A DNA stretch of 64,000 nt from Mytilus edulis (Eukaryota). Of this stretch, positions 7,710-25,486 are shown one piece after another. A program made the translations under genes and the position numbers. The notes beneath the pieces were generated by a model that saw only the letters and a list, made by a program, of their open reading frames with translations, was not told where the DNA came from and did not search any database. Every line of letters starts with the position of its first letter. Within the stretch, counting starts at the first letter, position 1. The stretch spans positions 15,066,001 through 15,130,000 of the forward strand of contig NC_092350.1 of NCBI RefSeq assembly GCF_963676685.1. Reading direction: 5' to 3'.

Positions 7710-8349
7710 ATGTTGAATTTCTGTTGTAAAATGATGCTGCCATGGATGAAAACAGAAAAGTGAAAGATACCAAAGGAATAGAAGGTGTTACTTTTTTTAA
7801 CTGCACCATTGTCATGATTGTAGAGGCTCATGGGGTGTCAAAGTAATCACATAATCACAATTTGTTTGCCAATAAAATCACACGATCATTAATATTTTTT
7901 ATAAAGAAATAATTAAATAATAAAAAATACAAACCTAGATTTTCAAATAATCAAAAAATCATGAAATATTTGGTCTGGTAATAATATAATCACTGTAAAA
8001 ACGTCCAAGTAATCACATAATCAAAACCCTGATGAGGAGGCTAATTGTACTTTGTGTCAACAATTCAATGTCAAGAATTCCTATTCCAAGATATCAGTAT
8101 CATTCCCATTTGGCGGCTAATGATAGTTGATACAAGGTGATGTTAGAATCAATGCATTTCAGGCTCATTGTGTAACCCCCAGTCTTACCCCAGAGTATTT
8201 CATGGTTTCTGGTCAGGTTACACTCCAGTGTATGCCAGGAAGATTAAGGTGACAAAAGAATGAAACATGAAAATTTTACACATGCATGTAAATTTTTATT
8301 TAAAAAAAACCCTAATGATATATATATATATACATTTACATTTTCTACC

Positions 8350-14850: not shown

Positions 14851-17800
14851 ATGTTTTCTTTTGGTAGTAGACGACTACCACAGAGGTCCCCATGTCTGCA
14901 AAATTTCCACAAGAGACGAAGAAGAACCCGAACCTCCGATAGGTTTATACATGTGTATGCAACCTCCTCTGCAGAAACACAAAACTATCAGAACTATATG
15001 AGAAGTGACCCACATAACTTAGCAGACGTTCCTGATCCTTATTTAATTGAAGAAATAGATGGAGTTCAGTTTTATAGGACAACTGTCCCAGTTGTGTGTG
15101 AATCTGTCAAAAAAAGTCTCATGTCATCACACAAAATGAAGAAGGCTATCAAATTCAGAGAGCAGCCCACAACAATAATACTTCCAGAAAATAGAAACCA
15201 ACTAAAATTAAGGGGAAGAAAGGGCAGAAGACTATTTGACAAAAGAGAACCAAACTCATTCATTTGTAGAGAAATTTCTTCAGGTTACTATGCCACATAC
15301 AATTTTGTTTTCATTAATCTACTTTACTTAGGGAGCTACCATTTGATTTTTATGGGGGGCTAGGATGAAAAATGTTGTCCTGCATTTTTTTTTAGCTGTA
15401 ATCTCTGTCCTGCCTTTTTATTTTTCACTCTGTTCGGTCCTGCCTTTTTTTTTTAGTTTATCCTGACTTTTTTTTATCTAAATTGTCGTCCTGACTTTTT
15501 TTTTTTTGCAAGTGTCTCATCCTGCCTTTTTTTTTTACTCAAAACTCCTGTCCTGCCTATTTTTTTCAAATTTCATCCTAGCCCCCCCATAAAAATCAAA
15601 TGGTAGCTCCCTTACTTTAAGGCTTTTTATAGCTGTCTTCAGTATTAATATTTTTTTAAATATTATTTTATTTATAGAGTTGATCCTTTTCTTATTTTAA
15701 GAGTTGTCCTTCAGTGGTGAAACTGTTCTTGGTCATCAACTGTTAGAAAATAGAGTGACAAATTTTCTAAGCAATTTTGAAAAATCACTTTTCATTTATT
15801 ATTTTTTCTTGTTAAAATGTATCCCTTATTTTTTTCTTGTTAAAATGTATCACTTATTTATAGGCATAGTTCTTTCTATTTTACAATTTTATACAACAAA
15901 GTTGTTATTTGACTACTTTAATATTACAGAGATTTCCTTAATAAAATATTGAAAATTTAATCCATTTAATAATTGCATTTTCATTTCAAAGATCTTTACC
16001 TCTAAAACTATTAAACCAATTAAAACCAAACTAGATTTTGAACTAAATCAAACCAAAATAGATATGAACAATTCCTATTGTATGCCTATATTTTAATTTG
16101 TGAATTATATCAATTATGTCAACCAACATTATTAGCTACCCTATACAAAAAAATTAAAACTGCTGTTACATGATAAAGATAATTTTTTTGATACATCAGT
16201 AAAAAGTTTTAAAAAATAGACATGGGACAAACCTGCCTGGACAAATATTCTCAGACAGTCAATTTCTATAGTAATTCAAAATTTTAAAGACAATTTATCA
16301 TTTGAGTTCTTCCCCTTTAGTTTATTAATGAATTGTACGAACTTCAAATACCCAAGTATCTCATTTTCTTCATATAAATTATTATATATATTGCTTAGAC
16401 TATAGTTTATATCGAATTTGATTTTTAATTTTAGGAGAGGAAAATGAAGAGAGAAAAAGACAAATTTTGGACAAATTGGAAAATGATAAAGAAAACCCAT
16501 TGACAAGAGTAAGTATATATGTACATAAAATGATAAATGTCTTAAAAGAGGATGCTTTGACTTGTATTACAATTGAAACATTCTCAAAAATGAAAAGGAA
16601 GTAGAATCACTGAAACCATCATAGCAAATTATGGTTGAAAAGATCATTTTGAGTTACATTCCTTGTTAATATGGAAAATTGATTGAGCAAGAATTGACTT
16701 TTTTAATAGCTGACTGCAGTATGGGCTTTGCTCATTGTTGAAGGCCATACAGTGACCTATAGTTGTTTATTTCTGTGTCATTTGGTCACTCATTGGCAAT
16801 CAAACCACATATAACCTCTACTCCATGACTAAATATTTATAACTAAAACACAAATATAAATTTGCAAACAGCGCGTCGAATGTGATAGACGCTGCATTTA
16901 ATTTGTATCTCAAATAATTTCCAACAGTACACATTTTACAAATATTAAAACATATATACAATATTTCAAATATCAGTGTATCCACAGTGTATTTCACTTA
17001 AATTTCTGAATGGTAACCCTTCATAGATAGTCGAGGCCGTCCAGGAAAAACCAACAATCGTTCACATGATATATCAGTATGAATGGAAACCTGTATCCGT
17101 GCCAATGCTCAGGATAAAAACATTTAATTAGTAAATACATATATACAAATATAAAATCAGAAAAATAACTTTAATTGCAATCAGCAATAATTAAAAATAA
17201 AGGAGCTTACTATGTTGAACGACGGCTAGAAAGTGAAGCGCTTGAAAAACACCAATATATCATTACTCAAAATTCGACTTTACTATACGAACCGCGGGAA
17301 AATACAAATATTCTTTTTTATATTTAAACTTGGGGGAAAAAAAATATATTTTACACAGTTAGCCATTTACAGGTTAGTTATATTACAGTCACTGGGCACT
17401 AGATTTATCATGTATTGTCTAGATTAATAATTATTTTTGAATTATTTTCATTCTTGAACATTTGAAAAGCATGTCAATAAAATTGATTTCATAACAAGTT
17501 ATTTTCATTCCTCAAAAGTTGAAAAGCATGTCAATGAAATTGATTTGATAACATGTAACTATACATGTACACTTAATATAAATAAAAAGCTTTATTTTTT
17601 AGACTGAAGAAGAAAGAATTCATGAGAGAGCAGAGTTTTTTTCCATGTCTATAAAACCTGATTTGAAATACCTGAGCCTACCTGAAGATTTTAGTCATAG
17701 AGATGATCCAGCTTATGCTGCCAGTATGTGTGGACAACAATTAGAATATCCATTACCAAAGAAGAGGAAGAGTCGTAACTTGTACACAGATAGTTGCTAT

Positions 17801-20800
17801 GTGTCCTACCACTCAGATGATGATCCATATGATAATAGCCAAGGACTACCTTGTGGTATGCTTTTGTCATAATTTCTAGATACTACTGTAGTTCCCCTCT
17901 AGAAATGTAAAATACAGAGATGTGTTACGATTGACAATGATATAAGTACTTCAACAGACTTTGTCTTCTTTCAATGGTCATCTGCATCATATTATTGTAA
18001 TGAATAAAGGAGATATGTGTGGAATATTCAAATAAAATACCAAGTCTTCAAAACAATCAAAGCATAATTGATTTTTAAAAAGTAAATGTCTTACAAAGGT
18101 AATTGAGTCAGGACTTTTTCTAATCAAAAGGCTCAAATGGCCCTCATATTCAAAAAGTAGTTGTACCAATTGATATCCTAGTACAGAACTACTGTAAATT
18201 CAAAAATTTGCGTGCATTTATGATTGCAATTTTAAGAAAACAGCCACATGCAGATATGTACTAGAGATCAGAAGGGGAGTGTTCTAATCTTTGCAGTACT
18301 TAATGAGTCGCTTTTTAAGAATGAATAAAAACTTCACATTAATTTCTGAATTTACAATTTTCACTGACCTATGAAACAGTTCCCTTATTGCATTAAACAA
18401 ATGATTGTGGTTAACATGGATTAAATATTTATTTGATTTTATTGACAAATGAAGTGTATTGTATAGGGACAAGACTTTACAGACCACCAGACAAACTAGT
18501 GGAGTTAGTTGCTGACGCCATAACAGAGAGTCCTGATGGTATGCTTCAAGTTCCTCAGATATATACTGTTCTTATGTAAGTATCAATAAAATGTGGTTAA
18601 ATACAGTCAGTTCATATATAAGTATCAAAACAATAGTTCAAATGCAGTCAGTTCATATGCAAATATCAAAACAGTAGTAACAATATTCTAAAAACATACA
18701 AAAAGAGTATGTAATAATCTGAAGAAGGATTACCTTAAATATATGATATTTTGTGGCAGGTTTTGCTAACTTCTGTTCAACATTTAATGGTCGAATGAGT
18801 TTAGGAAACATTGTATGCATAAATACCATAATGTGTTGGAAATTGAATATTTTATTTTTGTAAATATGAATTTTAAGTCTTGATGTTTCACATCTCAATC
18901 ATTTACTATTATGAAAAACAAATTATATTTAGCCGTAAAAAACAGTCCTCAGGTGACCCTGCTTTTTGAATTAATCATTATTTATGTTATTAAATTTATA
19001 TATTAAAGCAGGTTTGATAATGTTGGGACATGTTTATATAGTTAATATAAAATCTGGAGATGTGGTATGATTGCCAAATAACCACCAAAGACCAATTGAT
19101 GTAGATGTTAAAATAACTATATATTACCATACAGCCTTCAACAATGAACAAAACCCAAACAACATAGCAAATTATAGAAGCCCCTGACATGATAGCGTAA
19201 AGCACTTCAAAAGAGTTAACCAACAGTTTGATCTATGTAAAAAACAACAAAAATGTTGTTTGTCAAAATAAATCATCAGTTATAATGTGAAAAAAAATAG
19301 AACAACATGTTCCAAGCGCTTTTCTGGATTTACCATCACCAGGAACACTCAAAGCAGAAAATTTTGAAAGCCAAGTATGTATGACAACCAAAGCAGTTGA
19401 CAAGCTGTATGAGCAAAAAAGACCTAAAAGCCAAATCCATCTGAAATTAACTGAGGCCAAGGATTCTTTTTACTTGTCTTTTGGATTATAAATCAATAGG
19501 ATAGAAAAACACCTATAAAGCATAGAAAAATTGAGAAACCTTATATACTGTGCCAAAACAGTTTAACAACACTTTAAAAAAAAAAATTTTTGTTCTTTCT
19601 GGAAAAAAATTATTTAAACATCCTTGATATAATCCTTAGTTTTACCTGTAATTTAAAACAGTCGTACTTTTTTCCTGGAGATTGATTTCCCGCCATTTCA
19701 GCTTTGCACGTGTAATTGATGTTTTACCGTCTGTACCTGTACTTTTAAAACGATATTAAAAATTTCTTTTTCACTAACGTTCAAAAACACACCATTCAAA
19801 AACACACATTACACCTTTCAAAAAATTGCATGGTGCTTCAACCAGGTCTCCCCGAAAATGACCGTCAGAAAGCTCTTGGAATGGTTGATGCTGGAATGAG
19901 TGTTGCTGACATCATGGCTCGATTAAATGTGCATAAGGCAACAGTTCAGAGACTAACAAACAGATATCGACAAATTGCAACTGCACAGGATAGGTCGATA
20001 TCTCGTAGACCAAAAAAACTATTGTCAACGGATCAGCGCTATCATCTCTTTACGTCAACACGTGACAAGTTGTTTTACGGCCACAATTTAAGTAGTGCAT
20101 TGACTAAGGGCAGCTGCTGGTGTGCCTGCCAATCCTTCATTGGTGCACTTAGGGCATGGCAGAGAAATTGATTTTGAATAACACTATACTCATTTCCCCA
20201 TTTTGACCCTCCTGCGCTCCATACAAAGAAAATCCTCATGAATGTAAGGGATAAACATTCATGTTGCTTCTGACATGTCATAATTCCATTTTGTTATTAT
20301 TAAAATTATATGTGGCTATGATTTTGTAATAAAATGAAATTTCACATTTTTGTTGCTAAACTTTTTTGGCTCAGTATATTATAAAACTGAAATCTGTATA
20401 ATATAATGTTCATCATACAAATGAAAAATAATGATCAAATATATATATTTTTAGTAACTTTTCAAATCTTATTTTCCAGGAATAAATATCCCTATTTTAG
20501 ATACATGGATAAGTCTGCAGTCACTAGTTGGCGGGTAAGGTATCATAAGAACCTAATTTCTAGGATTGAAAAAAACTTGTTTTTTGCAAACTAAATTATT
20601 AAAGTTGACCTTTAGAGTCACAATAACATAATACTTACAAAATGTAGGGGACAATATAATATACACAGAAAAAAAGTAACTTGCCACTAAGTGAGTTGGT
20701 AATTAGGTATTTATTATAATTTCTGAATTAAGTTTGAATTGAAAATTTAAATTAAATCTTAAAACAGATGAAACAAAAGATTCATTGTTTACCTAAAATC

Positions 20801-23800
20801 TATTAAAATTGAATTGTATGCTCACTTTTTTGCAAAACACATGATTAAGTTGGAATGAACATTTGAAATGAATTTTTATGTAAAAGAATACATTTTAATA
20901 TGGAAAAAGTGATTAAAATCAATGAACAAGGAAAATATTTACATTTTTTTATTGGAAGCAGTCAATATTTTTTTTGAGTTATCTCCCATTAATACTGGTA
21001 GAAATCTTGTATACATACTAACACATTGTCAGAATTTCTATTAGAGGTTTCTATATTTAAGTTATTTTATTTCCTTCTTTTTTACTAATATTTTGGCAAT
21101 ATTTTTTTGTATAATTTTGAGTCTGTTTGATATATGATATAATGATTTATCTCCCATCAATTTTGATAAATAAACTCTGTATATTCATGTATTCATGCAA
21201 ACACACATTAATTTTCAAACTTCCAAATGAAAAAAAACTGTATGTCACTATCAATATATGTATATATTAGTTTAACTGTGTTTTTCAATAAATTTGTTCA
21301 TTAATGATTTACTTTTCAGAGTTCTGTAAGACATGCACTTTTCCAGAAATGGTTTAGGAAAGTTAAATTCACAACTCCAGAAATAAGCAGTAAAGGGTGT
21401 TTTTGGTGCATTAATACTCAAGTAGATTATGCAGAAATTTGTGCTGCAAGAACCAAAAAAGGTAGGGAAAATGATTTTGTGAAGTGTTTAATTGTAAACA
21501 TATCTTTTACCCTTGTATTTGTAACCTGGGACAAGTTACTCTATTGTTGTGATGAATATGCCAAAGGATGGCAATATGTAGTGTAAAGGGAAACATTGTG
21601 AAACTTGGTGAATTACTTTTAAGATTTCCATTTCCACTGTTTGTTTTTTTATAAATGCATATGGTTAGGCTGATAGAGTAATTCCCTGTCATTGAGTTTC
21701 AGCGTAACCCTTTGAAACATTTTTTTTGGGAAAAAGGACAGATTGTATATAAGACCCTTGTACAATCTTATAGCTCACACTGCAACAATAGTTACTGTTT
21801 TAATATTAATGGTACTGTCATTTTCAGAACAATTGTTTAAAGATTTTACAGTATTGATTTGCAACATGTAGTTGTAGTATTATTATCTCTTAAATTAATT
21901 TGAGCACATCTTTTTTACAGAAGAAAATACAGATGATTTAGACATAGATCCAAATCTACCAGACAATGTTATAGCATTACTAAAGGAAGAGGAGAAAGAA
22001 TTGCAGAAGGTTGTTGTTAAAGTAGAGGTAAACAAAAAGATTTATTTCATTCTATTACCATGATTTCCCTGTAAAATAAAACATCATTTCACATGTGAAA
22101 TAAATTTGAAAATCTCATCCCTTTGAAATATCATACAACTTTGGTGATGTCAATATATTTTTGATGACATTACATCAAAACAAATTGAGAATGTGTAGAT
22201 GAAGGTATAGTTTTTTTTGCATTTTGTGTACATGATAATTTTACGTTTGTTTTAGGTTTCTCTTGGATTTTTGCTTGTTATTCTATTCAAAAAAAAAATT
22301 GATAAGAGAGTAGCCATTATTACAGTGTCATCTCAGTAACTGATAAATGTGTTGAATAATATCTTGTTGCTGTGCATGAATCCAAGTTATTCTAAAAACT
22401 CTTCATCTCATGACCTAAGGATGCTGCAGATATTTAATTCAAGTTCAAAGTTAACAAATGTATTGTTGTAGGAATATTTTGTTTGCAACTTGCTTTGATC
22501 TAAATATCTGTCTTATGACTCAAAGTCTAAATCTGGGAGGTCAAGGTCACTTCATTTATTCACCCTTAATCAGGTGATTCTGCTATCTAATAATGATTTA
22601 AAGTTGTATAAAACTAGGAGCCAATTAAGGTTACATCTGTTAGGTAAAGGTTATACAGTTATAACCATGCTAAAGCCTTCTTTTATTTTAAATTGACTTA
22701 AGAGGTTGAAAAGTAACCATTGGACAGTTTTATTTTATCATTGATTTGTTTTTATTTCAGGATGCAGGATTGGTGAGTTGTTCTACTGTCAAAGTACCTG
22801 CACATCTAATCAATCAAGAGGCGGATCATGATCCAATACTAACAACATGTTTCACAACACCAAAGGCTGGTTATTACTGTAAGTCTGTCAGTATTTAGAT
22901 ACTTTTGATGAAATTATCTCCCCTGCTCGACAGCAGACATCTGTCTCATTCACAGGCCTTTTTTACATTGGTAGGCTTTTAATCAGTACTATTCAGCAGT
23001 ATTTGCACAGAAAATGGCTATAAGTACAACAAAAAAGGAATTATTCATTTATCATATATAATTCAGCATGGTTATCTATACTATTAAACAAGAAGACCTC
23101 ATTTTGCGTGTCACTTCTCTTCCTTCCACAATAAACCAATCATCATGACTCTGTGTCCTATGGCTAGCATGGAAAGTCGCATTTGTAATCCTTGCTTATG
23201 AGTATTTAGTTAGGATTATTTTGGGAGAAAAGCGAAAATAAAGGTGTCCAGATATTGTTTCCGTCATTGGGTGGACTTTCAAGTCATAGACAAGACTTCC
23301 GTTTCGGACTGTTTTAAATCACAAATGATTTTCATAATTACTTGGGGACAGAAAAATTACTTTGCGTTTTTCTGTATACTACGAATATACATATACTATA
23401 AAGGAAATGTATTTGCTATTTACTATCAATTCAAAGTTTATTATGCGCGGCTGTCACTGATATTTATTATATAAGGAATCTCTATAATGACTATATTGCC
23501 TAGGACAGTCGACTTGGAATGGAAAGTAAATAGCAAATACACTTTTTATAGTATATGTATGTTCATAGTATACAGAAAACCAGAAAACAAAAATTAACGG
23601 ACTGTGGAAAAAGGGGAAGGGCTTAAAAAATTGTCCTGTCACCAAATACCTATTACTTTTTATACCTTTCCTGAAATTGTCCAGTTAGAAAATCTTTTAA
23701 CAAAAATTCATCCTCATACTTTCAACCATGCTCTAAATGCCAGTGATTTTGCGGGTGTGTTCTAGTAGACAATAAAACTATTAAAAAGAAATCTAGGACT

Positions 23801-25486
23801 CAAAATGGTATTGAACTATTCATAACAATAATTGAATAAACAAGAATTTAGAATGTTCCCAGTCCCTAATGTTTTTTGTAAGATATTCCTCTGGTTTTAT
23901 CCATTATTTCCATGCAGTGCCATGAAATGTTTTGCCTGCTAACAACTACTGTTCTTTTCGTTCTTTTATCACATAAAATTTTAAAATCAAATTTTTGAAA
24001 ATCTTTGTTATGTTTATGCCCCTGCCATAAGCAATAGGGATTAAGTGTTACCCTTGACCATCAGTCATATTACATTTTCACACTTAAGTTTTATTATCAA
24101 AATATTTTAAAACTCTCACACAATGCTAAGAAACAAAAACACACTATCACACTCTTTTTCATCCACATTTTATGAACAATGCTGAGAACCACAACATGCA
24201 GACAAAGTCAGTGACTTTAACAAAAAAGAAAATCTGCTTTTTAAGCTTTATCATTTGAGAAGCCTCGAAATCAAATATTTGTAAAAACTAATATTGCAAA
24301 TTTTATGGAATTACTGACTTAAAAATGTTCAAGAACTGATATTTTTGGGCCAAACAAGTTCATTTGGTATCATTTCAAAGATGAGAATAATTTAATGTTT
24401 TATGTATGAGGGGACATAAAAAATAATGGCTGTCTGTCTCATGGTATTGTAAGGCCTCTTGTACAATTCTTGGGGGATTTTTAGCTCACCTGGAAGTTAA
24501 CTTTTACAAAAATCTTCTCCTTTTAAACTGCTTGACTGAGTTAAAATCCCCCTGCCAACCAGTATGGCCGCCATGGTTAAAAATAGAACATAGAAGTAAA
24601 ATACAGTTTTGGCTTATATCTCTGAAACTATAGCATTTGGAGCAACTCTGATGTAGGGTAACAATGTTTATAAAATAGATATCTATCTGCCCTGACATTT
24701 CAGACTCATAAGTACAATAGAAATGAATACAGCAGGCTAATGATAAACACTTTTAAGTAAAAATTGTAAATATGTATTATTGTATATAACATGTTAAAAT
24801 GTTGCATGAATTATTTTTCCTGATTTTTATTTCCAGACGGAATACATAGTGGATCTGTTTTTCCTGTCTCCACACGAAAAAAGGCAATATTGCCAGTCTC
24901 ATACATGAACAGATGCCTTACACCATCATTGATAGGCAGTAGAAGCACGTCTCCATTAAGTGACAGCTCAAATAGCTGTTCTTCTCTAGTCAGTCCTCTA
25001 CTGAATAGTGTGAAGCCTGATACACTAGGGGTTGACTCTCAGACAAGTCTTGGAAATTCTTCCATTAACTGGGCTCCAAAGCTACCATTTGATCAGTTTC
25101 TTGATGGACCAATCACGCCTTCACAAGAGTTTTTGCCAGAAAAAAGTGAAGATATACTATCAAACTGCCATTATCTAGAAAACGATGACATTGTGAGAAG
25201 CTCCTGTTCAGATCTGAGCAGTGGGAAAAGTTCAGTGTATGGAGACTGGGAACCAGGGTATGAGTTAAAGGAAAATGATTTGTTACAATGTCTGAATGAA
25301 AATGTGAATACCTCAATGAACTTTAAGTCTGAGGACAATACAGAAATAGGCTACATAATACCAGATGGTGTGAAGTGGGGGTTTATTGGAATGGATGAGA
25401 TGCCCACAGCAATATTTGACAAGGATGTCATGGCTTCATCTCCGGAATACCAATCACTTAGTCCTGAATCTAATCCAGAAATATAG
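14851..25486 (+). CDS. Divergent forkhead-box (winged-helix) transcription factor, 9 exons, 646 aa
   Basis: Phase-consistent exons: 14851-15283, 16435-16508, 17603-17855, 18467-18575, 20480-20534, 21320-21461, 21921-22027, 22761-22878, 24837-25486 (1941 nt). Exons 4-6 give RPPDKLVELVADAITESPDGMLQVPQIYTVLMNKYPYFRYMDKSAVTSWRSSVRHALFQKWFRKVKFTTPEISSKGCFWCI, collinear with the forkhead consensus. Basic NLS-like motifs KRRRR and PKKRK; Ser-rich/acidic tail. Confidence 0.88.
15331..15611. mobile_element. PIF/Harbinger-type MITE; decayed relative near 55150-55402
   Basis: ~40-bp TIRs gggagctaccatttgatttttatgggggg / ccccccataaaaatcaaatggtagctccc with TTA duplicated on both sides. Confidence 0.85.
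19307..19348 (-). ncRNA. Degenerate type I hammerhead motif (second family)
   Basis: Minus strand reads gtgttc-CTGGTGA-tgg-taaat-cca-GAAA-a-gcgc-t-TG-gaacat. Stems are intact, but A6 is G and position 17 is G, so it is probably inactive. Confidence 0.5.
19546..20376 (+). mobile_element. Internally deleted Tc1/mariner transposon
   Basis: TA-flanked TIRs tactgtgccaaaacagtttaacaaca / tgttgctaaactttttggctcagta. ORF 19830-20171 begins with a paired-like HTH (RQKALGMVDAGMSVADIMARLNVHKATVQRLTNRYRQ...DRSISRRPK). No DDE domain is visible. Confidence 0.85.
23086..23765. mobile_element. Probable rolling-circle-type non-autonomous insertion in a forkhead-gene intron
   Basis: Compositionally distinct block ending in ttttgcgggtgtgttCTAGt, with an internal imperfect inverted repeat near 23370-23580. 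Confidence 0.35.

What the first reader, a model, noticed from the sequence alone, without database searches (positions are those of the whole stretch)
18467..21461. Orphan forkhead factor with a rewritten DNA-recognition helix
Seen: three short exons missed or only partly covered by the ORF track splice into a full forkhead-like domain. Structural residues are kept (RPP, AI..SP, IY, YPYFR, W, RH.L, F.KV, KG.FW), but helix 3 reads WRSSVRHALF instead of W(K/Q)NSIRHNLS. Established: the Asn, Arg, His and Ser of NxxRHxxS make the base contacts in FoxA, FoxO and FoxM structures; here the Asn is Ser and the Ser is Phe. The phase-0 intron directly after WR matches the W(K/Q)^NS position known from FoxO, FoxP, FoxM and FoxK. 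Inference: an intact 646-aa lineage-specific Fox protein outside the named subclasses, with new DNA specificity or a non-DNA-binding role.
Basis: partly seen in the sequence, partly recalled or inferred. Interest (0 to 1): 0.8.

Follow-up and report, generated by a model that had tools for sequence, protein, structure and literature searches.

The report
Mussel FoxZ gene, not an orphan
The spliced forkhead gene with an unusual DNA-reading helix is real and expressed, but it is the mussel copy of FoxZ, a published though barely studied gene class found across molluscs, brachiopods, annelids, centipedes and ticks, all with nearly the same odd helix.

Summary
Exons 18467-18575, 20480-20534 and 21320-21461 are joined at exactly these GT..AG junctions in transcript contigs from two independent studies. 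They encode a forkhead domain. A public Mytilus protein, 100% identical over the domain, scores 59.7 bits against Pfam PF00250. Its AlphaFold model matches FOXA2 and FOXN1 DNA-binding domains at Z about 10. Helix 3 does read WRSSVRHALF.

The "orphan, lineage-specific" reading fails. An exhaustive search with exon 3 found 22 relatives. Named ones come from bivalves, gastropods, octopus, chiton, Lingula, Capitella and Strigamia; follow-up look-ups added Owenia and Dermacentor ticks. All carry SW(R/K)SS(I/V)RHAL(Y/F)QKWF, almost unchanged.

Published tables list these proteins as Fox-OG16/NA, which is the FoxZ of Wu et al. 2020. In the clam Mulinia, FoxZ is a testis and meiosis hub gene. Owenia "Orphan-2" of Seudre et al. 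2022 is the same gene.

New here:
- The helix was rewritten once and then held fixed; the FoxZ clade has 98/99 support and a long stem branch.
- FoxZ shares both of its forkhead-domain introns, in position and phase, only with the genome's FoxN1/4 gene.
- 12 of 13 exonic variants are synonymous.

DNA specificity is untested. The gene is already known; interest is modest.

The parts
14851..15283 (+). Coding exon 1. ATG at 14851, 144 codons plus 1 base, GT donor at 15284.
   Evidence: Sequence. The translation is 142/143 identical to residues 2-144 of Mytilus trossulus LOC134685039 (P0032). This junction was not covered by the reads laid.
16435..16508 (+). Coding exon 2, (G)EENEERKRQILDKLENDKENPLTR. 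It forms the first helix of the conserved N-terminal extension.
   Evidence: AG at 16433-34 and GT at 16509-10. The loose end of RNA contig X12 before 17603 matches 16479-16508 with 1 mismatch. It matches P0032 residues 145-169.
17603..17855 (+). Coding exon 3. It carries the TEEERIHERAEFF motif, the KKRKSRNLY basic (NLS-like) motif and DNSQGLPC.
   Evidence: Joint 17855|18467 in RNA contigs X6 and X12. 84/84 identical to P0032. Its 3 variants are all synonymous.
18467..18575 (+). Forkhead exon 1: helix 1, strand 1 and the start of helix 2. It ends in a phase-2 intron after IYTVL.
   Evidence: Pfam PF00250 E 0.0027, profile positions 2-31. Joints seen. 35/35 identical to P0032. The FoxN1/4 gene of this genome has an intron at the same position and phase.
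19830..20171 (+). Not part of the gene product. A transposase-type HTH open reading frame (Tc1/mariner-like fragment) inside the first forkhead intron.
   Evidence: Pfam HTH_23 2.7e-8, HTH_29 1.2e-7, HTH_Tnp_IS630 0.1. Short contigs at high depth lie here.
20480..20534 (+). Forkhead exon 2, (M)NKYPYFRYMDKSAVTSWR. It covers the end of helix 2, a loop 4 residues longer than in FOXN1/FOXK, and the start of helix 3. It ends in a phase-0 intron after WR.
   Evidence: Joints 18575|20480 and 20534|21320. 18/18 identical to P0032. The insertion is visible in the HMMER alignments.
21320..21461 (+). Forkhead exon 3: recognition helix SSVRHALFQKWF, strand 2, wing 1 and strand 3.
   Evidence: Pfam PF00250 E 3.7e-4, profile positions 49-83. 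Best solved relatives are FOXN1 and FOXN3. 47/47 identical to P0032. Its 4 variants at 3 sites are all synonymous.
21921..22027 (+). Coding exon 7 (acidic, EENTDDLDIDPN...). A NAGNAG acceptor at 21919-21923 gives the 646-aa and 645-aa isoforms.
   Evidence: Joint 21461|21921 in X6 and X12. P0032 (isoform X2) lacks one Glu here.
22761..22878 (+). Coding exon 8. It contains DHDPILTTC, the family's C-terminal DPDPIL motif.
   Evidence: Joint 22027|22761. 39/39 identical to P0032. The motif is conserved in alignment A1.
24837..25486 (+). Last coding exon with TAG stop at 25484-25486. Predicted disordered.
   Evidence: Sequence. The translation is near-identical to the P0032 C-terminus. pLDDT is below 50 in the model. 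This junction was not covered by the reads laid.

Best explanation
This is the mussel (Mytilus) ortholog of FoxZ, also published as Fox-OG16/NA and as Owenia 'Orphan-2'. FoxZ is an old, protostome-wide class of clade-II forkhead genes.

Shown: It encodes a 646-aa protein. A confidently folded core of about 210 residues comprises a conserved helical N-terminal extension followed by a complete winged-helix forkhead domain. Disordered tails flank this core.

Inferred: the protein most likely works as a nuclear, DNA-binding transcription factor. Its recognition helix keeps the Arg and His of the canonical N-x-x-R-H-x-x-S pattern. The Asn has become Ser, the following Asn has become Ala, and the Ser has become Tyr/Phe or been deleted. 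So I expect a binding site that differs from RYAAAYA (about 50-55% likely).

From other bivalves, not tested in Mytilus: expression is testis and meiosis associated.

The helix was changed once on the stem of the family and has been held almost invariant since. The unusual residues are therefore functional, not decay.
For: Identity:
- Exon 3 alone, searched against 1.84 billion proteins, finds 22 relatives at 53-68% identity.
- Their names place them in Pecten, Mytilus, Sinanodonta, Mercenaria, Saccostrea, Magallana, Haliotis, Gigantopelta, Octopus, Liolophura, Lingula, Capitella, Owenia, Strigamia and Dermacentor.
- XP_033752233, XP_045177123, XP_041365712 and KAK3581527 are listed as Fox-OG16/NA in Table S6 of PMC12530298. 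That paper equates the group with Fox-Z of Wu et al. 2020 and gives the same taxon spread: Lingula, Capitella, Centruroides, Strigamia.
- P0032 (M. trossulus LOC134685039) is 100% identical to all three forkhead exons.
- A tree of the helix-3 to wing segment gives a FoxZ clade at 98/99 support, on a stem of 2.4 changes per column with short inner branches.

Fold:
- PF00250 scores 59.7 bits on P0032 against a cut-off of 27, and 45.7-61.5 bits on 13 relatives.
- AlphaFold pLDDT is 85-97 over residues about 140-350.
- Foldseek TM is 0.7-0.88 to Fox-DNA complexes. VIA-align gives Z 10.2 for FOXA2 and 9.8 for FOXN1, against about 6 for generic winged helices.

Constraint:
- S306, W307, S309, S310, R312, H313, A314, L315, Q317, K318, W319 and F320 are invariant in 22 sequences from five phyla.
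- 12 of 13 exonic variants are synonymous, including 6 of 6 in the forkhead exons.
- The domain's net charge is +4 to +11 in all members tested.

Expression: spliced contigs occur in two studies. FOXZ is a testis-specific hub gene alongside PRDM9, SYCP3, HFM1 and MSH4 in Mulinia (PMC9716669).
Against: - No DNA-binding measurement exists for any FoxZ, so the altered specificity rests only on the loss of residues known to contact bases in other Fox structures.
- The tissue of the Mytilus RNA runs is hidden. Testis expression here is extrapolated from other bivalves.
- One raw-read RNA-seq run (X24) gave almost no reads on the exons.
- Published phylogenies disagree on whether FoxZ is a valid class. 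Nicolini et al. deliberately dropped the name, and Seudre et al. left the Owenia gene as an orphan.
- My tree uses only 40 residues and does not resolve the sister group.
Full-length analyses rest on the public protein P0032 as proxy.
Confidence: 0.85

Rival explanations
1. FoxZ keeps the forkhead fold but no longer reads DNA bases. The invariant helix-3 surface binds a protein partner, chromatin or RNA, and the conserved N-terminal extension is part of that interface.
For: The Asn that gives the main base contact in solved Fox complexes is Ser in every member, and the Ser is lost. A family-specific extension of about 110 residues is predicted with pLDDT 85-95 next to the domain. The Owenia paper notes that divergent clade-II Fox genes may have acquired new protein functions (PMC9539403).
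Against: Arg and His of helix 3, the basic wing (KxxF...SKG) and a net positive charge of +4 to +11 are kept in all phyla. A basic NLS-like motif lies upstream. The closest structural matches are all DNA-bound Fox domains.
Confidence: 0.2
2. FoxZ still binds the ordinary forkhead (RYAAAYA) or forkhead-like (GACGC) site. On this view the helix changes are tolerated and alter affinity more than specificity.
For: The backbone fold is superposable at 1.5-2.9 Å. Arg-His is retained. The nearest solved relatives, FOXN1 and FOXN3, already bind two different site types with one helix (entry titles).
Against: Four to five positions of the DNA-facing helix differ from the pattern kept by every other Fox locus of this genome whose helix 3 could be read. 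They are then invariant over five phyla, which fits selection for a different ligand better than neutral tolerance.
Confidence: 0.2
3. One reading: a lineage-specific orphan Fox protein, outside all named subclasses, that arose in this lineage.
For: RefSeq calls the protein 'uncharacterized'. The own-genome PF00250 scan did not list the locus. There are no paralogs in the genome.
Against: Orthologs with the same helix and the same flanking motifs exist in five phyla. The group is published as Fox-Z / Fox-OG16.
Confidence: 0.02
4. A decaying or mis-assembled gene, that is, a pseudogene or a chance run of ORF fragments.
For: The exons are short, and each scores below the Pfam cut-off taken alone.
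Against: The reading frame is intact over nine exons. All junctions are GT..AG and are present in RNA contigs. 12 of 13 variants are synonymous. Public annotation gives the same model.
Confidence: 0.01

Closest known systems
FoxZ (Wu et al. 2020, Gene 733:144387), also Fox-OG16/NA (Nicolini et al. 2025, PMC12530298) and Owenia fusiformis 'Orphan-2' (Seudre et al. 2022, PMC9539403 supplement)
   Same: Same orthology group. It has the same helix-3 signature, the same N-terminal EE.DIH.RAE.Y motif, the same basic motif and the same C-terminal DPDPIL motif. Published accessions of the group are direct hits of the window's exon 3.
   Different: Only small differences. Mytilus has Val for Ile and Phe for Tyr in helix 3; Phe is also seen in Capitella and the ticks. 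Mytilus lacks the P(K/R)EW motif after wing 1. None of the papers I could read mention the rewritten recognition helix or the shared introns. I could not read Wu et al. 2020.
FoxN1/4 (human FOXN1, PDB 5OCN/6EL8; mussel gene at G000:C7:1.83 Mb)
   Same: It is the best solved-structure relative by sequence profile, at 44.8 bits. It also has the same two intron positions and phases inside the domain: phase 2 four residues after the conserved IY, and phase 0 at W(K/R)|(N/S)S. No other clade-II Fox gene of this genome shares both.
   Different: FoxN1/4 keeps the canonical WKNSVRHNLSLNKCF helix. FoxZ has a 4-residue longer H2-H3 loop and one residue fewer after RH.L. The segment tree separates FoxZ on a long branch and does not join it to FoxN1/4.
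FoxT (Drosophila fd3F and Crg-1; Schomburg et al. 2022)
   Same: Another recently named clade-II class allied to FoxN1/4, with possible male-specific or cilia-related roles (PMC8918179).
   Different: Owenia has both a FoxT (OFUSG26073.1) and the FoxZ-type Orphan-2 as separate genes, so they are not the same class. I did not align FoxT sequences here.
Canonical Fox domains with solved DNA complexes (FOXA2, FOXO1, FOXK, FOXM1, FOXP3)
   Same: Same fold: VIA-align Z 8.8-10.2, with rmsd 2.0-3.0 Å over 84-91 residues for the five rows FOXA2, FOXA1, FOXM1, FOXO1 and FOXP3. Arg and His of helix 3, the W of helix 3, the F.KV strand and the KG..W wing are conserved.
   Different: The Asn of NS(I/V)RH is Ser. 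RHN is RHA. The Ser of RHNLS is Tyr/Phe or deleted. LN.CF is replaced by QKWF.

Membership tests
Forkhead (Fox) domain, Pfam PF00250 | Profile match above the curated cut-off (27 bits) | tested here: met
   59.7 bits, E 3e-16, on P0032, which is identical to the window over the domain. Exon by exon the scores are 18.2 and 21.0 bits, collinear but each below the cut-off alone. I did not search the joined window exons.
Forkhead (Fox) domain, Pfam PF00250 | Winged-helix fold H1-S1-H2-H3-S2-wing-S3 | tested here: met
   AlphaFold model: H264-274, E279-281, H282-292, H301-315, E320-323, E336-339, with pLDDT above 90. Foldseek TM 0.7-0.88. VIA-align Z 10.2 for FOXA2 and 9.8 for FOXN1.
Forkhead (Fox) domain, Pfam PF00250 | Canonical base-contacting pattern N-x-x-R-H-x-x-S in helix 3 | tested here: not met
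   The window reads S-S-V-R-H-A-L-F; the family reads S-S-(I/V)-R-H-A-L-(Y/F). Every other Fox locus of the genome in which helix 3 could be read has N, G, D or H at the first position.
Forkhead (Fox) domain, Pfam PF00250 | Binding to RYAAAYA-type DNA | not testable with these tools
   No binding data exist for any FoxZ in the papers I found.
FoxZ / Fox-OG16 | Groups with the published members to the exclusion of other Fox classes | tested here: met
   Published OG16 accessions are top hits of exon 3. FoxZ clade at 98/99 against 39 paralog segments of this genome. The tree has only 40 residues and contains no external named classes.
FoxZ / Fox-OG16 | Family signature SW(R/K)SS(I/V)RHAL(Y/F)QKWF.K with a 4-residue longer H2-H3 loop | tested here: met
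   Alignment A1 shows these columns invariant in 22 sequences. The window reads SWRSSVRHALFQKWFRK.
FoxZ / Fox-OG16 | Flanking motifs: EE.DIH.RAE.(Y/F), a K/R-rich ..RRNY motif and C-terminal DPDPIL | tested here: met
   The window has TEEERIHERAEFF, KKRKSRNLY and DHDPILTTC.
FoxZ / Fox-OG16 | Testis or spermatogenesis-biased expression | not tested
   Reported for Mulinia, scallop and oyster (PMC9716669). The tissues of the Mytilus runs are coded.
FoxN1/4 | Helix WKNSVRHNLSLNKCF and strong similarity to FOXN1 | tested here: not met
   Window exon 3 scores 18.8 bits against FOXN1. The true mussel FoxN1/4 exons score 58.5 and 51.6 bits.
FoxN1/4 | Two introns inside the forkhead domain: phase 2 after IYxxx, and phase 0 at W(K/R)|xS | tested here: met
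   FoxN1/4 has IYNFM+AT|GTAAGT and WK|NSVRH. FoxZ has IYTVL+AT|GTAAGT and WR|SSVRH. This points to shared ancestry, not membership.
FoxT | Orthology to fd3F/Crg-1-type genes | tested here: inconclusive
   Owenia has a separate FoxT besides the FoxZ-type Orphan-2, which argues against identity. I made no FoxT alignment.

The most novel reading that the evidence does not exclude
FoxZ is an ancient protostome sister of FoxN1/4, marked by two shared forkhead-domain introns. Its recognition helix was rewritten once, before molluscs, annelids, brachiopods and arthropods diverged, and then held fixed. On this reading it embodies a second, still unmeasured forkhead DNA-recognition code, S-S-I-R-H-A-L-Y-Q-K-W-F, used in male germ-line and meiotic gene regulation.
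Probability: 0.4. Interest if true: 0.6.

Novelty: already known. Interest (0 to 1): 0.3.

Why it matters
The gene itself is catalogued, so the window adds no new family.

The check does settle a muddle in the literature. The same gene is called FoxZ in one paper, an unnamed "mollusc-specific" group in another, and an "orphan" in a third. The present data support the wider, protostome-level distribution and give the class a simple diagnostic: the invariant helix, plus two introns shared with FoxN1/4.

The helix is the interesting part. Among well-conserved Fox classes this one has replaced the base-contacting Asn and Ser yet is under strong constraint. A single SELEX or PBM experiment would therefore show whether the forkhead fold has a second recognition code. 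It would also give a handle on target genes in bivalve testis development, where FoxZ is proposed as a key factor.

Tried and rejected
1. The six-frame PF00250 scan of the whole genome gave 59 matches but not this locus. Only 60 candidates are scored, and each exon alone is below the cut-off. I did not count this as evidence against a forkhead domain.

2. A profile search with alignment A1 in the word-indexed database was capped at 8000 candidates and returned only family members. It says nothing about deuterostome or cnidarian relatives.

3. ESM Atlas look-ups of the N-terminal extension and of the domain gave no usable hit.

4. Run X24 (raw RNA-seq reads) laid only 13 partial reads, so it shows neither expression level nor strand. 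Run X2 covers exon-intron borders without splicing, so it is DNA or pre-mRNA, not evidence against splicing.

I could not map introns in the Capitella, Lingula or tick FoxZ genes. The indirect evidence is that eight unnamed genomic ORF fragments start right at the boundary, reading (Q/K)|SS(I/V)RH, and two read through WR|V.

6. Full-domain phylogeny against named Fox classes was not done. The 40-residue single-exon tree leaves the sister group unresolved.

7. FoxM as identity was rejected. The genome has its own FoxM-type exon (NSIRHNLSLYSIFERET), and FOXM1 is not among the sequence hits of the family profile.

8. Strigamia SMAR008104 in Schomburg's tables (HMM score 49.4; assigned M, N1/4, N1/4, N1/4) is probably the centipede FoxZ. 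I could not link it to T1J3E0, so I used it only as a lead.

9. Literature searches by accession number found nothing in main texts. The hits were in supplements.

Full report
**What is in the sequence**

The window is G000:C7:15066001-15130000 of a 1.37-Gb genome.
- 18467-18575 follows an AG acceptor. It begins with the last two bases of a Gly codon and ends with AT before GTAAGT.
- 20480-20534 begins with G, which completes ATG, and ends with CGG before GTAAGG (phase 0).
- 21320-21461 begins with AGT TCT GTA AGA CAT.

Read in order they give (G)TRLYRPPDKLVELVADAITESPDGMLQVPQIYTVL / M / NKYPYFRYMDKSAVTSWR / SSVRHALFQKWFRKVKFTTPEISSKGCFWCINTQVDYAEICAARTKK.

I traced the rest of the gene. The other coding exons are 14851-15283, 16435-16508, 17603-17855, 21921-22027, 22761-22878 and 24837-25486. 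Together the nine exons hold 1941 nt, which is 646 codons plus a stop.

**Is it real and expressed?**

I laid four runs on 17400-23300. A 942-nt contig of run X6 (study P4) and a 2415-nt contig of run X12 (study P8) carry the joints 17855|18467, 18575|20480, 20534|21320, 21461|21921 and 22027|22761. Every skipped piece has GT..AG ends. The letters of the X12 contig that lie before 17603 match 16479-16508, so that junction is seen too. The 15283|16435 and 22878|24837 junctions lay outside the stretch and rest on the public annotation alone.

The genome holds exons 1 and 3 of the domain only once. The spliced form therefore cannot come from a retrocopy.

Thirteen differences between these contigs and the window fall in exons. 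Twelve are third-position synonymous changes, including all six in the forkhead exons. That is the pattern of a gene under purifying selection.

Run X2 covers exon-intron borders unspliced, so it is DNA or pre-mRNA. The raw-read run X24 gave almost nothing. Neither bears on the result.

**Is it a forkhead domain?**

- Pfam PF00250 hits exon 1 (E 0.0027, profile positions 2-31) and exon 3 (E 3.7e-4, positions 49-83). The two hits are collinear. The 18-residue middle exon is too short to score.
- The public protein P0032 (Mytilus trossulus LOC134685039 isoform X2, 645 aa) is identical to the window in all three forkhead exons: 35/35, 18/18 and 47/47. It is nearly identical elsewhere. It differs in length by one Glu, through a NAGNAG acceptor at 21919-21923. 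I used it as a proxy for the full product.
- P0032 scores 59.7 bits on PF00250 against a cut-off of 27.
- An AlphaFold model built with 22 family members has pLDDT 85-97 over residues about 140-350, with the order H1-S1-H2-H3-S2-wing-S3.
- Foldseek matches Fox-DNA complexes at TM 0.7-0.88 and rmsd 1.5-2.9 Å.
- VIA-align against 48,161 chains gives FOXA2 Z 10.2, FOXA1 9.9, FOXN1 9.8 and FOXM1 9.1. Generic winged helices stay near 6.

**The helix**

Every other Fox locus of this genome in which I could read the motif (about 45) has N, G, D or H at the position of the Asn, followed by (S/N/A/T)(I/V/L)R(H/Y/K). Nearly all read NS(I/V)RHNLS. This gene reads SSVRHALFQKWF.

Against FOXN1 and FOXK, HMMER places four extra residues in the H2-H3 loop and one residue fewer after RH.L. 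So the Ser of RHNLS is either replaced by Phe or deleted.

**It is not an orphan**

Exon 3 alone, scored by HMMER against every one of 1.84 billion representatives, finds 22 forkhead relatives at E <= 1e-3, with 53-68% identity. A 23rd hit is an unrelated repeat protein.

The named relatives come from these groups:
- Bivalves: Pecten, Ylistrum, Mizuhopecten, Mytilus, Sinanodonta, Potamilus, Ruditapes, Mercenaria, Dreissena, Mactra, Mya, Saccostrea, Magallana.
- Gastropods: Haliotis, Gigantopelta.
- Cephalopod and chiton: Octopus, Liolophura.
- Brachiopod: Lingula.
- Annelids: Capitella, Owenia.
- Arthropods: the centipede Strigamia and Dermacentor ticks.

In the 22-sequence alignment A1 these columns are invariant: S306, W307, S309, S310, R312, H313, A314, L315, Q317, K318, W319, F320 and K322. 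The family signature is SW(R/K)SS(I/V)RHAL(Y/F)QKWF.K. The mussel's own departures are I->V and Y->F. Phe also occurs in Capitella and the ticks.

Conserved motifs outside the domain are an N-terminal EE.DIH.RAE.Y helix, a K/R-rich ..RRNY motif and a C-terminal PSPV.DPDPIL..C. The mussel has all three.

**It already has a name**

Table S6 of Nicolini et al. 2025 (PMC12530298) lists XP_033752233 (my P0019), XP_045177123 (P0007), XP_041365712 (P0008) and KAK3581527 (P0025) under Fox-OG16/NA. Mytilus edulis CAG2246856 and M. galloprovincialis VDI24665 appear there too; I did not compare those two with the window.

The text says OG13 and OG16 are the Fox-Y and Fox-Z of earlier bivalve work. It says Wu et al. 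2020 found Fox-Z in bivalves, Lingula, Capitella, Centruroides and Strigamia, and that later studies did not recover it. The authors therefore avoided the name. OG16 carries the domain annotation the text ascribes to Fox-Z, so OG16 is FoxZ. My independent search recovers the same taxon spread.

The supplement of Seudre et al. 2022 contains Owenia "Orphan-2 (manually curated)". It holds the signature helix and the whole of P0017, and it stands next to a separate Owenia FoxT. So the "orphan" of that study is FoxZ, and FoxZ is not FoxT.

In Mulinia lateralis, FOXZ is a testis-specific hub factor in a module with PRDM9, SYCP3, HFM1 and MSH4. It is there called protostome-specific (PMC9716669).

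I could not read Wu et al. 2020 because it is not in the library. I found no paper that discusses the recognition helix or the DNA specificity of FoxZ.

**What this check adds**

1. A maximum-likelihood tree of the single-exon segment from helix 3 to the wing used 13 FoxZ sequences and 39 paralogs of this genome. FoxZ forms one clade at 98/99 support, on a stem of 2.4 changes per column, with short branches inside. The helix was rewritten once and then held fixed. The sister group is not resolved with 40 residues.

2. The family profile is closest to FOXN1 among solved chains (44.8 bits), then FOXK (41), FOXN3 (40) and FOXA2 (35).

3. FoxZ shares both domain introns with FoxN1/4.
 - The gene at G000:C7:1.83 Mb is FoxN1/4 by its exons, which score 58.5 and 51.6 bits to FOXN1 against 37.6 and 28.5 to FOXN3.
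 - It has exactly the same two introns inside the domain. One is ...EIYNFM+AT|GTAAGT (phase 2, four residues after IY). The other is ...DGWK|NSVRH (phase 0). These compare with ...QIYTVL+AT|GTAAGT and ...TSWR|SSVRH in FoxZ.
 - The FoxJ1, J2/3, K, M, O and P genes of the genome have only the second intron. Their first exons match profile positions 1-48 to 1-52.
 - In Schomburg's tables a low-scoring Strigamia Fox (SMAR008104) fell with N1/4 in three of four analyses. It is probably the centipede FoxZ, but I could not verify the link.

4. Eight unnamed ORF-type fragments from genomic contigs begin right at (Q/K)|SS(I/V)RH, and two read through WR|V. So the phase-0 intron is conserved in the family.

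**How it most likely works**

Shown:
- The gene is transcribed and spliced.
- It is under purifying selection.
- It has a forkhead fold.
- Its helix 3 is invariant across the family.
- The domain's net charge is +4 to +11 in every member tested.
- A basic motif lies upstream.
- An N-terminal extension of about 110 residues is confidently predicted.

Inferred:
- It is a nuclear DNA-binding factor.
FoxZ keeps only the Arg and His. So I expect a site different from RYAAAYA and put this at roughly 50-55%.
- The rivals are a non-DNA ligand (about 20%) and retained canonical binding (about 20%).
- Testis and meiotic function is extrapolated from other bivalves.

**Verdict**

The gene is already known as FoxZ / Fox-OG16, so novelty is low. 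The invariant rewritten helix and the intron link to FoxN1/4 are useful and testable additions.

The profile search was capped. I made no joined-exon search or full-domain tree.

Noticed in passing
window 19830-20171 (+): A 113-aa ORF with transposase-type helix-turn-helix domains (HTH_23, HTH_29, weak PAX and IS630 matches) sits inside the first forkhead intron. Short RNA/DNA contigs pile up on it at high depth, as expected for a repeated Tc1/mariner-like element.
   Followed up: partly
G000:C4:21,066,000-21,291,000 (loci L013, L016-L021, L023-L030, L042, L049): A tandem cluster of about 20 intronless Fox genes and fragments on both strands, with helix AW(R/K)N(S/N)(I/V)RHNLS(L/I)NECF.K.G. 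It looks like a large FoxQ2-type expansion, as described for Spiralia. At least two members are broken or truncated.
   Followed up: no
window 21919-21923: A NAGNAG tandem acceptor (cag|aag|) explains the 646-aa and 645-aa isoforms. The two RNA contigs use the upstream site; public isoform X2 (P0032) uses the downstream one.
   Followed up: yes
G000:C11:63,182,000-63,192,500 (L041, L048): A second divergent clade-II Fox gene has helix NNIRHALTAHDCFVRLP and a FoxP-like wing. It is probably the 'Fox-Y'/Fox-OG13 group of the bivalve literature. It shares the RHAL change with FoxZ but keeps the Asn.
   Followed up: partly
G000:C12:47,594,217-47,594,680 (L044, minus strand): An intronless, divergent forkhead domain (KPNYSYTEMIYLSILRSPNFCLPITEIYKYIRNRFSYFRSSARKHWCNAVRHSLSKTKCF) lies in a 530-aa open frame. 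Its class was not determined. It resembles Owenia Orphan-1 in the words SPTFCLP/SPNFCLP.
   Followed up: no
G000:C845:23874-24131 and G000:C1947:605-712: Small contigs repeat Fox loci of C5:80.27 Mb and C7:1.83 Mb with identical scores. They are probably unplaced haplotigs, so Fox counts in this assembly are slightly inflated.
   Followed up: no
window 22916-23112: Very high summed contig depth in all three contig runs inside the intron after exon 8, with loose ends on both sides. It is a repeated element, not part of the transcript.
   Followed up: no
P0032 residues 140-255 (window exons 16435-16508 and 17603-17855): The region upstream of the forkhead domain is conserved across phyla. It is predicted as two long helices plus short strands with pLDDT 85-95. 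No Pfam family or Atlas hit matches it, and its role is unknown.
   Followed up: partly
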